From: Anolis carolinensis
Lineage: Eukaryota
DNA: 64,000 bases
Reading direction: 5' to 3'
Assembly (NCBI RefSeq): GCF_035594765.1
Contig: NC_085842.1
Span: 16,406,782-16,470,781 of the forward strand
Notes under the pieces: generated by a model
Told to the model about the DNA's origin: nothing
The model's database searches: none
The model's input: only the letters and a program-made list of their open reading frames with translations
In this document: one piece after another, positions 14,147 to 18,601 of the stretch
How positions within the stretch are numbered: the first letter of the stretch is position 1
Layout of the letters: each line of letters begins with the position of its first letter
Made by a program: the position numbers and the translations under genes

Positions 14147-14984
14147 GTTTTGTCGAAGGCTTTCATGGCCAGGATCACAGGGTTGTTGTATGTTTTTCGG
14201 GCTGTATGGCCATATCCCAGAAGTATTCTCTCCTGACGTTTCGCCCACATCTATGGCAGGCATCCTCAGCATTTAGGTGATTAACTACAACATTCACACT
14301 GACCTCTCTCACCCTAGACTTTCCACAAATACAGTAGAGTCTCACTTATCCAACACTTGCTTATCCAACGTTCTGGATTATCCAACGCATTTTTGTAGTC
14401 AATGTTTTCTATATATCATGATATTTTGGTGCTAAATTCATAAATACAGTAATTACTACATAGCATTACTGCGTATTGAACTACCTTTTCTGTCAAATTT
14501 GTTGTATAACATGATGTTTTGGTGCTTCATTTGTAAAATCATAACCTAATTTGATGTTTAACAGGCTTTTCCTTAACCCCTCCTTATTATCCAACATATT
14601 TGCTTATCCAACATTCTGCCGGCCCGTTTATGTTGGATAAGTGAGACTCTACTGTATATATTTACCTCTTTGCTTAGTTTTCTCCATACCTCACAACCTC
14701 TGCGGATGCCTGCCATAGATGTGGGCGAAACGTCAGGAGAGAATACTTCTGGAACATGGCCATACAGCCCGAAAAACATACAACAATCCTGTGTTGTTGT
14801 ATGCTTTTTGGGCTGTATGGCCATGTTCCAGAAGTATTCTGACATTTCACCCACATCTACCTCTGCGCATGCCTGCCATAGATGTGGGCGAAACGTCAGG
14901 AGAGAATACTTCTGGAACATGGCCATACAGCCCGGAAAACACACAACAACCCTGTGATCTCGGCCATGAAAGCCTTCGACATAC
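14147..14984. mobile_element. Penelope-like inverted pLTR cluster; similar inverted pairs at 23033-23413, 27403-27628, 35526-36086, 47857-48531
   Basis: Reverse and forward copies of the same ~130-bp unit ending GGCCATGAAAGCCTTCGACAACA, each with a hammerhead-like CTGAGGA...GAAACGTC core. Confidence 0.75.
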
Positions 14985-15842: not shown

Positions 15843-16024
15843 CCACATACTGTGAAGATATTATTACCGCTATATTAACTCCTGTTTTATTGTCTTACTG
15901 TGTTTTATCTTTTGTATATTGTGCAATGTATTTATGCTGTTGTTTCTGTAAATTATGCTGGTCGGGCCTTACCCCATGTGAGCCACCCGAGTCCCCATGG
16001 AGAGATGGTGGTGGGGTATAAATA

Positions 16025-16070
<46 letters not shown>

Positions 16071-16806
16071 TATTAGTGTCTATAATTTCATGTCCACATA
16101 CAGTGTCTATAATTTCATGTGCTCCTGTGATACTCTGCTGAATATAGGTTTGTTCTTATTGCAAGTACAGGGTATTCTTTGGGATTACTCTAATATAATG
16201 ATTTATCATTGACATTGTATATCTTTGTGTTTGTGGGCAAATATTGCTTTGGATTCAGTCAGAAACCCATTTACTTAATAAAAACTAAAGAGCACCAACC
16301 ACTAATATATATATACACACACATATATAGTGTGTGTGTTTATATGTGTGTGTGTGTGTGTATAAAAAATGTAGTGGTTGGTGCTCTTTAGTTTTTATTG
16401 AGTAAATGGGTTCCTGACTGATATATATACAGTAGAGTCTCACTAATCCAAGCCTCGCTTATCCAAGCCTCTGGATAATCCAAGCCATTTTTGGAGTCAA
16501 TGTTTCCAATATATCATGATATTTTGGTGCTAAATTCATAAATACAGTAATTACAACATAACATTGCTGCGTATTGAACTACTTTTTCTGTCAAATTTGT
16601 TGTATAACATGAAGTTTTGGTGCTTAATTTGTAAAATCATAACCTAATTTGATGTTTAGTAGGCTTTTCCTTGATCAGTCCTTATAATCCAAGATATTCG
16701 CTTATCCAAGCTTCTGCCGGCCCGTTTAGCTTGGATTAGTGAGACTCTACTGTATATAGTTGGTCCTCTGTATCCACAGATTCTCTGTCCGTGAGTTCAG
16801 TGGCCA

Positions 16807-17134
16807 TGTCAGGGTGCAACAAAGAACAGCATCATCAAAGCTGGTCTTTTCGCAACCTGACTACAAGAGGACAGAGGAAGGAGACCATTTGGCAGGATAG
16901 GCTGATTTATGACAGGGTCTGGTCTTCAAACGTGGGAAAGGACCAAAGGAAAGGGAGGTGTGGATGGAGAAGGAGGAGGGGGGAGGCAACAACCCCATAT
17001 ACTGAGGGGAAAAGCGGAAGAGAGTCAGTAAAAGCTTTTGCAGTCATCTTGGCAAGGCGGATTCAATAAAGTTTTCCATTGCGACCAGCGGTGTGAGCCT
17101 ATTTCTTGGGTCCTACACCTTCCAGGAGCGGACA
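16807..17134 (+). repeat. 5' LTR
   Basis: Direct repeat of 22161-22488. TATA-like CATATAC at about 16996, Inr-like TCAGT at 17025-17029, AATAAA at 17065-17070. Confidence 0.97.
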
Positions 17135-17136
17135 TT

Positions 17137-17147
17137 AAGCTTTTACT
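17137..17147 (+). promoter_or_regulatory. Self-priming primer binding site (non-tRNA)
   Basis: AAGCTTTTACT, 2 nt after the LTR, is the exact reverse complement of AGTAAAAGCTT at 17027-17037 inside the LTR. Confidence 0.75.
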
Positions 17148-17197
17148 CCCTTTTTTTTCCGGCTCATCCCGTGAGGAAAGGTCTCTCCGGTGAGAGC

Positions 17198-18568
17198 ATG
17201 AACCCTGATGGAGGAGAAACCATGAAGGAATTCCTCTTCCTGGAAGAAGAACAGGCGAACCCTCGAGGTGCAGAGGAGTTGAGAGAGGAAAGGAACCCAT
17301 CGCCCGCATTGAGCGAAGGGGGGACAGACCCCTCGGACCCGTCGTGGAAGCCGCTGACCTCCACCCAGTTACCCGCAGGCAGGGGAGTGACGGTGAGACG
17401 GAAGATCCAGATGGGAGGCGATTGGCAGCGAGACGGAGAGGGAGCCCCGGAGATGAGAAGGATGGAGAGGAGATTAGATGCGATGGAGAAAATGTTTGAA
17501 ACTTTCTCTCGACAGATGGATCTGATGCAGCGGCAGGTAAACGAGTCCTGGAGGGCGACAGTCGAGCAACGGGAGCAGAGGAGAGGGCTGCCCGGGAGAG
17601 GGACTGAACCCCGTCCCTTTGCCGGGGAGGGTCCACAGGACTATGTGGATGAGATGCCTCAGCAGGGCACATCAGTTTTCCCCACGGGCCTGTCGGGAAG
17701 GAGCCAAATGCCTGGGAAGGGAGAATTTCGGGTGAAGTTCAACGGGGACCCCAAACAGCTGTCTTATTTCATTACAAACGTAAGACACTTCATGGAGGAT
17801 TTTGGGGACCAATTCCCTTCAGAAAGCGCAAAAATCCACATGGTGGGGGCAAACTTGAAAGAAGCAGCTGCAGACTGGCTAATGCAGATGTATGATACTG
17901 GTGCCCGGGAGCTAGCCTGTCTGGAGGATTTCCTAAGAGCCCTCCGTGAGAGATTCGAAGACCCTTTGGCAGAGGAGAGGGCGAAGGCCCAACTCAAAAG
18001 GATATACCAGGGAGGAAGGACAGTGTCAGAATATGCCCTGGAATTTAAAGCCACAGCGGGGAAGATCAGGGACTGGTCCGACACCACCAAACTGGAATAT
18101 TTCAGGGCTGGTTTACGCTCTGAGGTGCTCGAGTGGGCTTTACACAGAGGAAATCCAAGAGACTTGGAGGACTGGATTTTGCTAGCGGGGCGCGTGGAGG
18201 TGGACCAACAGCAAATCTCTCGTCGTCCAAGGGAGAGCAACAGAATCAAACCCCCGACAGCAGCAACACGGCGCTTCTCCCCTCGTCGCGGAAGGTCGAC
18301 CAGCAGGGAGAGGAGAGCAGGGAGGGGGGCCTGCTTCGCTTGCGGCCGCGAGGGACATCGAGCGGCAGAGTGTCCGAAAGGGACAGGCGTGGAGACAAAA
18401 GGAGAGAGGCTTCACAGCCAGAAGCCACCCCACCAGAGCTCCAAACTAGCAAAAGGGAAAGCTGCCATGGCAACGGAAACGGCTTTAGCCCCAGGGCAGC
18501 TTCAGGCAGAAGAGATGGAGGAAGCGGAGGACCTGGAGTTACCGGGAAACGACTGGGATCTGTTTTGA
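17198..18568 (+). CDS. gag: Gag (456 aa): capsid domain plus CCHC zinc knuckle
   Basis: First ATG after the LTR. FNGDPKQLSYFI...AAADW...QGGRTVSEYALEF retrotransposon-gag motifs and CFACGREGHRAAEC knuckle. Confidence 0.92.
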   Translation: MNPDGGETMKEFLFLEEEQANPRGAEELREERNPSPALSEGGTDPSDPSWKPLTSTQLPAGRGVTVRRKIQMGGDWQRDGEGAPEMRRMERRLDAMEKMFETFSRQMDLMQRQVNESWRATVEQREQRRGLPGRGTEPRPFAGEGPQDYVDEMPQQGTSVFPTGLSGRSQMPGKGEFRVKFNGDPKQLSYFITNVRHFMEDFGDQFPSESAKIHMVGANLKEAAADWLMQMYDTGARELACLEDFLRALRERFEDPLAEERAKAQLKRIYQGGRTVSEYALEFKATAGKIRDWSDTTKLEYFRAGLRSEVLEWALHRGNPRDLEDWILLAGRVEVDQQQISRRPRESNRIKPPTAATRRFSPRRGRSTSRERRAGRGACFACGREGHRAAECPKGTGVETKGERLHSQKPPHQSSKLAKGKAAMATETALAPGQLQAEEMEEAEDLELPGNDWDLF

Positions 18569-18601
18569 ACGCCCGGAAACAGATCGAACCACCAGAGGGC
18601 G
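18544..18601 (+). promoter_or_regulatory. -1 programmed ribosomal frameshift signal (G GGA AAC + H-type pseudoknot)
   Basis: Heptamer 18544-18550 in the gag frame, 6-nt spacer, stem 1 18557-18566/18576-18585, stem 2 CGCCC 18570-18574/GGGCG 18597-18601. pol is in the -1 frame. Confidence 0.85.

What the first reader, a model, noticed from the sequence alone, without database searches (positions are those of the whole stretch)
17027..17147. tRNA-independent self-priming signature: the first 11 nt of the predicted transcript pair with the PBS
Seen: no TGG-type tRNA PBS after the 5' LTR. AAGCTTTTACT (17137-17147) is perfectly complementary to AGTAAAAGCTT (17027-17037), which begins at the A of an Inr-like TCAGT about 30 bp after a TATA-like motif. 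Known: fission yeast Tf1 primes minus-strand synthesis with its own first 11 nt after RNase H-dependent cleavage, and this has been proposed for the Tf1/sushi group. Inference: an intact amniote element using self-primed reverse transcription.
Basis: partly seen in the sequence, partly recalled or inferred. Interest (0 to 1): 0.8.

Follow-up and report, generated by a model that had tools for sequence, protein, structure and literature searches.

The report
Self-priming lizard LTR retrotransposon
An intact, very young jumping gene of the green anole lizard carries the sequence signature of a rare trick, first shown in fission yeast, in which the element's own RNA tip rather than a host tRNA starts its DNA copying; this extends a known mechanism to squamate reptiles and is not a new kind of system.

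Summary
AGTAAAAGCTT (17027-17037) is the exact reverse complement of AAGCTTTTACT (17137-17147). The second site lies 2 nt after the end of the 5' LTR, where a primer-binding site must be. The pairing is exactly 11 bp and there is no TGG-type tRNA site.

The host element (16807-22488) is an intact Ty3/gypsy chromovirus-type retrotransposon of Anolis carolinensis. It has 328-bp LTRs that are 100% identical, a 5-bp target duplication, gag, and a -1 frame pol.

In 11 of 12 related families fetched (Anolis, rattlesnakes, gecko, two fishes, one fungus), the post-LTR site is an exact complement of a site inside the same LTR. In seven squamate-clade families the pairing is 11 nt, 77 of 77 pairs are Watson-Crick, and 10 of 11 positions carry compensatory changes. 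The duplex always begins at an A or G that lies 28-32 nt after a TATA-like motif in most of the elements.

Tf1-type self-priming is therefore well supported by sequence. The transcription start and the RNase H cut remain inferred. Self-priming is already regarded as a common feature of the Tf1/sushi group, vertebrates included, so this is a new member of a known kind.

The parts
16802..16806 (.). target-site duplication GGCCA, left copy
   Evidence: the same 5 nt directly flank both LTRs
16807..17134 (+). 5' LTR, 328 bp, TG..CA. Inferred layout: U3 16807-17026, R 17027 to about 17086, U5 about 17087-17134
   Evidence: 100% identical to 22161-22488. The U3/R/U5 split is inferred from the TATA, the 11-mer and AATAAA.
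16997..17002 (+). TATA-like motif ATATAC, 29 nt upstream of the proposed start
   Evidence: TATA or a TATA-like motif sits at -28 to -32 in relatives L003, L005, L006 (TATTTAG in L001 and L004).
17027..17037 (+). proposed self-primer AGTAAAAGCTT, the first 11 nt of the predicted transcript
   Evidence: exact complement of the PBS. The position and length are conserved and the sequence co-varies in relatives.
17065..17070 (+). polyadenylation signal AATAAA inside R
   Evidence: AATAAA or ATTAAA at +23 to +38 in the window and four snake elements
17135..17136 (+). 2-nt spacer TT between the LTR end and the PBS
   Evidence: a 2-nt spacer is present in all seven 11-nt elements
17137..17147 (+). 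primer-binding site AAGCTTTTACT
17198..18568 (+). gag (456 aa): Ty3-type capsid and a CCHC zinc knuckle
18544..18550 (+). G_GGA_AAC slippery heptamer in gag phase, the likely -1 frameshift site
   Evidence: it lies 15 nt before the gag stop, and the pol frame is open across it
18133..22023 (+). pol ORF in the -1 frame: protease, RT, RNase H, integrase (H2C2, core, Tf2-type SH3), and a weak chromodomain
22147..22157 (+). polypurine tract GAAGGGGGGAG, 3 nt before the 3' LTR
   Evidence: sequence left of the 3' LTR; the function is inferred
22161..22488 (+). 3' LTR. It holds the second copy of the 11-mer at 22381-22391.
22489..22493 (.). target-site duplication GGCCA, right copy

Best explanation
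The window holds a full-length, very recently inserted Ty3/gypsy chromovirus-type LTR retrotransposon of Anolis carolinensis that starts reverse transcription by Tf1-type self-priming.

Shown by sequence:
- The 11 nt directly after the 5' LTR plus a 2-nt spacer are an exact complement of an 11-mer about 107 nt upstream in the same LTR.
- This arrangement, with the same length and geometry but a different sequence, is kept across squamate families through fully compensated changes.

Inferred:
- Transcription starts at A17027, about 29 nt after the TATA-like motif, so the 11-mer is the 5' end of the genomic RNA.
- The RNA folds back so that nt 1-11 pair with the PBS.
- The element's RNase H cuts after nt 11.
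- The freed 3'-OH primes minus-strand strong-stop DNA through the spacer, U5 and R.
- After transfer to the 3' R the cycle proceeds as in other LTR elements, with plus-strand priming at GAAGGGGGGAG.

If the plus strand copies the retained RNA primer, as reported for Tf1, the PBS is rewritten from the primer in each cycle. That would explain why pairing is perfect Watson-Crick in every family.
For: - Exact 11-bp complement at the PBS position. Null expectation is 7.6e-5 per 11-mer, and 0 of about 5000 internal 11-mers match the LTR.
- The MFE fold of 17027-17150 closes with this duplex: -42.8 kcal/mol, z = -3.7. The same holds in all seven relatives folded.
- Relatives: L001 AGAGCTGGTTT, L003 AGGGTAAACTT, L004 AGGGCTGACTT, L005 AGTGCTGACTT, L007 GATTCTGGCAT, L002 AGTTCCCGCTT. 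Each matches its own PBS 2 nt after its LTR. 77/77 pairs are Watson-Crick, and 10 of 11 positions have changes on both sides. Position -1 never pairs, and position 12 pairs in only 1 of 7.
- RNAalifold on four snake elements keeps the helix, with 7 compensated pairs.
- The signature also appears in gecko (10 nt), Labeo (10 nt), Lates (12 nt) and the fungus Cunninghamella (10 nt, 2-nt spacer).
- A TATA-type motif at about -30, C at -1 in 6 of 7, and AATAAA or ATTAAA at +23 to +38 in most.
- Domain set and best solved relative: Ty3 Gag-Pol 7q5b, E = 3e-125.
- The mechanism as defined for Tf1 is an 11-base primer with an RNase H cut between bases 11 and 12 (PMC7175516). It is called a common feature of the Tf1/sushi group (PMC10085805).
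Against: - No transcript, CAGE or cDNA data were available, so the start site at 17027 and the cleavage are inferences.
- The two extra duplexes of the Tf1 'pretzel' were not better than shuffled controls in any of seven elements.
- No host tRNA set was at hand: ARAGORN found no tRNA genes in the window or in the nine loci scanned. Pairing of the PBS with an internal tRNA segment was therefore not excluded directly.
- One distant relative (Batrachochytrium, L010) shows no such complement.
- The protease triad reads D-C-G instead of D-S/T-G, so full autonomy of this family is not certain.
Confidence: 0.85

Rival explanations
1. A host RNA (a tRNA, a tRNA half or another small RNA) primes at 17137-17147. 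The complement inside the LTR is a regulatory stem that masks or presents the PBS.
For: No host tRNA set could be scanned. Half-tRNA priming exists in some Ty1/copia lineages (PMC6317226).
Against: There is no TGG after the LTR. The PBS differs at 10 of 11 positions among related families and always follows its own LTR 11-mer. One host primer cannot fit all of them, and the different primers would each have to be mirrored in the LTR.
Confidence: 0.05
2. The inverted repeat is only a long-range closing stem of the 5' leader, used for packaging, dimerisation or translation control. Priming happens by some other, unrecognised means.
For: The duplex closes a well-folded R-U5 domain. Leader stems with other roles are known in retroviruses (general knowledge).
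Against: The 3' arm always sits exactly where a PBS must be, 0-2 nt after the LTR end. The length is held at 10-12 nt. The 5' arm always begins at the predicted +1 and never extends upstream. No alternative PBS is visible. The same signature is accepted as the self-primer in Tf1, Tj1 and related elements.
Confidence: 0.07
3. Chance complementarity, helped by the palindromic AAGCTT core.
For: Six of the 11 nt are a palindrome, so part of the match is automatic once AAGCTT occurs at both sites.
Against: Expected matches in the whole window are 0.12 against 3 seen, all at the predicted places. Null counts are 0-3 per roughly 5000 k-mers. Eleven of 12 families show the same feature with unrelated, non-palindromic sequences.
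Confidence: 0.01

Closest known systems
Tf1 and Tf2 of Schizosaccharomyces pombe (and Tj1, Tosmo1-3, Tcry1)
   Same: The PBS just after the 5' LTR is complementary to the start of R. The primer length is 11 nt, as stated for Tf1 (PMC7175516). The elements are chromovirus-type with PR-RT-RH-IN, a Tf2-type SH3 domain and a chromodomain. The LTR ends in CA before the PBS (PMC10085805).
   Different: Pol is only distantly related; no named Tf1 sequence was available for a direct comparison. Here gag and pol are separate frames joined by a -1 slip, whereas I recall Tf1 as a single ORF (the fission-yeast paper mentions single-ORF and in-frame-stop types). The two side duplexes of the 'pretzel' were not detectable above shuffles. 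There are no experimental data here.
Vertebrate Tf1/sushi elements (sushi-ichi of pufferfish and others; Butler et al. 2001, cited)
   Same: A vertebrate host, membership of the fungi/vertebrates chromovirus cluster, and proposed self-priming. The fish relatives fetched here (Labeo, Lates) show the same signature.
   Different: This element belongs to a well-supported squamate-only clade. That clade has its own primer class (AG......CTT, 11 nt, about 100 nt from the LTR end, 2-nt spacer). The fish elements use GC...TATT(C), lie 270-330 nt from the LTR end and have a 0-1 nt spacer. I could not read Butler et al., so I do not know whether reptiles were covered.
PEG10 / RTL (sushi-ichi-related) domesticated genes of mammals
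   Same: The gag matches the same capsid families (Retrotrans_gag/PEG10_N-capsid, DUF4939/RTL1-8_LDOC). The slippery heptamer G_GGA_AAC is the one I recall for PEG10 (from memory, not tested).
   Different: Those genes have lost their LTRs, their PBS and their mobility. This element keeps all of them.
Tcn1-clade chromoviruses of non-seed plants and TAR Ty1/copia elements
   Same: They are predicted to self-prime for lack of a tRNA PBS (PMC6317226).
   Different: They come from different kingdoms and lineages. They are known only from predictions, and no detailed comparison was made here.

Membership tests
Tf1/sushi group of self-priming chromoviruses | The PBS directly downstream of the 5' LTR is complementary to a sequence in the same LTR, not to a tRNA 3' end | tested here: met
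   17137-17147 against 17027-17037, 11/11, with a 2-nt spacer and no TGG.
Tf1/sushi group of self-priming chromoviruses | The complementary segment is the very 5' end of the element's mRNA | not testable with these tools
   Only indirect support: TATA at -29, C at -1 and A at +1, the duplex never extends upstream of +1 in 7 of 7 elements, and AATAAA lies at +38. No transcript data.
Tf1/sushi group of self-priming chromoviruses | Primer of 11 nt (Tf1: first 11 bases, cut between bases 11 and 12; PMC7175516) | tested here: met
   Exactly 11 bp here and in 6 further squamate-clade families; position 12 pairs in only 1 of 7. The cleavage itself was not tested.
Tf1/sushi group of self-priming chromoviruses | RNase H-dependent cleavage that frees the primer | not testable with these tools
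   An RNase H domain is present with the DAS motif. No biochemistry.
Tf1/sushi group of self-priming chromoviruses | Three-duplex 'pretzel' leader structure (PMC10085805) | tested here: inconclusive
   The central duplex is present and closes the MFE. Duplexes between PBS-adjacent segments and R/U5 are no better than shuffles, with z from -1.4 to +1.5.
Tf1/sushi group of self-priming chromoviruses | Chromovirus Pol: PR-RT-RH-IN with a C-terminal chromodomain | tested here: met
   One search gives the order PR, RVT_1, RNase H, H2C2, rve, SH3_Tf2-1, Chromo. The Chromo hit is below Pfam's cut-off in this copy (17.7 against 25.1 bits), but PF00385 is recorded for most relatives.
Tf1/sushi group of self-priming chromoviruses | Pol groups with named Tf1 and sushi-ichi references in a tree | not tested
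   No named reference sequences could be fetched. Proxies: the nearest non-squamate relatives are amphibian, fish and fungal chromoviruses, some named 'Tf2 polyprotein' by their source, and the tree of 24 rows.
Ty3/gypsy (Metaviridae) LTR retrotransposon | LTRs with TG..CA, a short TSD, gag, and pol with RT before IN | tested here: met
   The best solved relative is Ty3 Gag-Pol 7q5b, E = 3e-125.
tRNA-primed LTR retroelements | PBS complementary to the 3' end of a tRNA (starts TGG) | tested here: not met
   No TGG in 17135-17170. The PBS varies with its own LTR in relatives. A full tRNA set was not available.

The most novel reading that the evidence does not exclude
Squamate chromoviruses form a currently active amniote lineage in which an 11-nt self-primer is held as a strict ruler from fission yeast to lizards. 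Its perfect Watson-Crick match to the PBS would be kept not by slow compensatory selection but by the PBS being rewritten from the retained RNA primer at every replication cycle. On this reading the primer sequence is free to drift and diagnoses families. The green anole would then be the first amniote in which self-primed reverse transcription can be studied in a natural, apparently live element.
Probability: 0.35. Interest if true: 0.5.

Novelty: new member of a known kind. Interest (0 to 1): 0.35.

Why it matters
The result shows that the tRNA-independent start of reverse transcription, proven only in fission yeast, has left a clear and evolutionarily tested footprint in young, intact elements of lizards and snakes. 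It gives a simple sequence rule for annotating these elements, which tRNA-based PBS finders miss: LTR end, 2-nt spacer, then an 11-mer that mirrors a site about 100 nt upstream. It also predicts the transcription start of each family. The lineage is the living sister of the elements that gave mammals PEG10 and the RTL genes. Beyond that it is confirmation and extension, not a new principle.

Tried and rejected
- Transcript evidence for the start site was not obtainable. Exact look-ups of the window's gag and pol found nothing in the collection. The one Logan contig of a relative (L002) starts 66 nt upstream of its 11-mer, so it says nothing about the start.
- A host tRNA scan was not possible: ARAGORN found no tRNA genes in the window or in the nine loci scanned.
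- The original Tf1 papers and Lin & Levin 1997 are not held in the library. Tf1 facts are therefore cited from later open papers.
- The pretzel side duplexes were not significant.
- The negative control with a second, unrelated gypsy fragment in L005 failed because no LTR pair was found.
- Rfam scan of 16700-22600 gave nothing relevant, only a sub-threshold snoRNA hit.
- One search was a badly formed pattern search and gave no information. The slippery site was found by script instead.
- I did not build the joined Gag-Pol frameshift product; gag and pol were searched apart.
- No contig looked human, and the window has no N.

Full report
**What is there.** The finding lies in the 5' leader of a full-length LTR retrotransposon at window 16807-22488 on the + strand.
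- The two LTRs (16807-17134 and 22161-22488) are 328 bp, begin with TG and end with CA. They are 100% identical.
- They are flanked by a 5-bp target duplication, GGCCA.
- Between them lie gag (17198-18568; Ty3-type capsid and a CCHC knuckle) and a 1296-codon pol ORF in the -1 frame (18133-22023). Pol carries protease, RT, RNase H, integrase zinc finger and core, a Tf2-type SH3 domain and a weak chromodomain.
- A G_GGA_AAC heptamer in the correct phase lies 15 nt before the gag stop.
- The best solved relative is the Ty3 Gag-Pol polyprotein, E = 3e-125.
- A UniRef protein of Anolis carolinensis is 99% identical.
- A second copy of the same family was fetched from an A. carolinensis assembly. 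It sits at a different site, with its own TSD and LTRs that are 99.4% identical (L008).
- The window has no N, and no contig met looked human.

**The observation.** AGTAAAAGCTT at 17027-17037 and AAGCTTTTACT at 17137-17147 are exact reverse complements.
- The neighbouring positions cannot pair, so the duplex is exactly 11 bp.
- The 3' arm starts 2 nt (TT) after the last base of the LTR, which is the place of a primer-binding site. No TGG follows the LTR.
- In the whole 64-kb window the 11-mer occurs only at these two places and in the 3' LTR copy, against 0.12 expected.
- None of about 5000 internal 11-mers of the element has an exact complement in the LTR.
- A TATA motif lies 29 nt upstream of 17027 and AATAAA lies 38 nt downstream.
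- An RNA running from 17027 to 17150 folds so that the two arms close the structure: -42.8 kcal/mol, z = -3.7 against shuffles.

**The test in relatives.** I used Pol to find relatives and fetched the DNA around twelve of them. For each I located the LTRs and compared the bases just after the 5' LTR with the LTR itself.
- In six further families the LTR end is followed by a 2-nt spacer and an 11-mer that is the exact complement of an 11-mer 98-119 nt upstream of the LTR end. These are four families of Crotalus adamanteus, one of C. tigris, and one Logan contig of unknown host.
- The sequences differ from family to family: AGAGCTGGTTT, AGGGTAAACTT, AGGGCTGACTT, AGTGCTGACTT, GATTCTGGCAT and AGTTCCCGCTT.
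- Over the seven families, 77 of 77 pairs are Watson-Crick and 10 of 11 positions show changes on both sides.
- The base before the 5' arm never pairs with the base after the PBS. Position 12 pairs with the base before the PBS in only one family.
- RNAalifold on the four alignable snake leaders recovers the same helix, with 7 compensated pairs.
- Each leader folded alone closes with this helix.
- The 5' arm is preceded by C in six of seven families. A TATA-type motif lies about 30 nt upstream in most, and AATAAA or ATTAAA follows at +23 to +38.
- More distant relatives show the same feature with other parameters. These are a gecko element (10 nt, 297 nt from the LTR end), Labeo rohita (10 nt), Lates calcarifer (12 nt with no spacer) and the fungus Cunninghamella blakesleeana (10 nt with a 2-nt spacer).
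- An element of Batrachochytrium shows none.
- A Pol tree of 24 rows places the window element in a squamate-only clade (SH-aLRT 100) together with all the 11-nt, about-100-nt-distance elements. The gecko element is in the sister squamate clade, amphibian and fish elements come next, and fungi lie outside.

**How it most likely works.** Two points are shown by sequence. The PBS-position 11-mer mirrors an LTR-internal 11-mer, and selection (or the replication mechanism itself) keeps this in step across families. The rest is inferred from the mechanism established for Tf1:
- The 11-mer is the first 11 nt of the transcript.
- It folds back on the PBS.
- The element's RNase H cuts after nt 11.
- The freed end primes minus-strand DNA.

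For Tf1 the literature states that the first 11 bases pair with the PBS and that RNase H cuts between bases 11 and 12 (PMC7175516). The equal length here is a striking agreement. The uniform absence of G-U pairs or mismatches holds even in an old copy whose LTRs are only 93% identical (L005). That would follow if the PBS of each new copy is templated by the retained primer. This is my inference, not a result.

**Rivals.**
- A host tRNA or fragment as primer is very unlikely, because the PBS differs among families and always follows its own LTR.
- A purely structural stem does not explain why the 3' arm is always at the PBS position, why the length is fixed, or why the 5' arm starts at the predicted +1.
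- Chance is excluded by the relatives.

**What is weak.**
- The start site is not mapped.
- No host tRNA set could be scanned.
- The two side duplexes of the Tf1 'pretzel' (PMC10085805) were not better than shuffled controls.
- The protease triad in this family reads D-C-G where relatives have D-S/T-G.

**Comparison with what is known.**
- Self-priming is described as a common feature of the Tf1/sushi group and as implicated from fungi to vertebrates (PMC10085805, PMC4600332, PMC6317226).
- Full-length, presumably active Metaviridae, including chromoviruses, are known from Anolis and other reptiles (PMC3670739).
- I found no paper in the library that documents the self-priming signature in Anolis or other squamates. 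I could not read Butler et al. 2001.
- The finding is therefore a correct reading, now supported by covariation, of a new member (in fact a squamate clade) of a known kind.

**Handling notes.**
- gag and pol were searched apart, and the frameshift fusion was not joined.
- One bench step that would alter a cloned copy of this animal retroelement is referred.

Noticed in passing
window 16424-16758 and 14329-14657: Two copies (about 90% alike) of a roughly 325-bp MITE with perfect 27-30 nt terminal inverted repeats (CAGTAGAGTCTCACT...) and TA-rich flanks, Tc1/mariner-like. One copy ends about 50 bp upstream of the retrotransposon.
   Followed up: partly
window 18544-18550: G_GGA_AAC slippery heptamer in gag phase, 15 nt before the gag stop. 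It is the likely -1 frameshift site and the same heptamer I recall for mammalian PEG10.
   Followed up: partly
window about 18700-18711 (pol residues LDCGC): The protease active-site triad reads D-C-G in this Anolis family, whereas squamate, amphibian and fish relatives have D-S-G or D-T-G. The family nevertheless has very young copies.
   Followed up: partly
L001, L003, L004 (Crotalus adamanteus), gene 10001 to about 14100: The snake relatives encode gag and pol as one continuous ORF of about 1365 aa, whereas the Anolis element needs a -1 frameshift. The expression strategy therefore changed within the squamate clade.
   Followed up: no
L001-L005 leaders (for example L003 9059-9100): In the snake elements the AAUAAA signal sits in the loop or top of a hairpin directly after the self-primer, followed by a second U5 hairpin next to the PBS. 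This is seen in single-sequence folds only.
   Followed up: partly
window 15986-16091 and 25046-25712: Long (ATT)n microsatellites. The second is embedded in a tandem array of about 158-nt units (25111-25623).
   Followed up: no
L010 8610-8923 (Batrachochytrium dendrobatidis): This chromovirus relative (39% Pol identity, LTRs 94% alike) has neither a TGG-type PBS nor a self-complement after its 5' LTR. Its priming mode is unclear.
   Followed up: partly
L001 9143-9150: The LTR terminus of this snake copy reads ..TATA instead of ..TACA in both LTRs, yet the spacer and the 11-nt PBS/primer match are intact.
   Followed up: no
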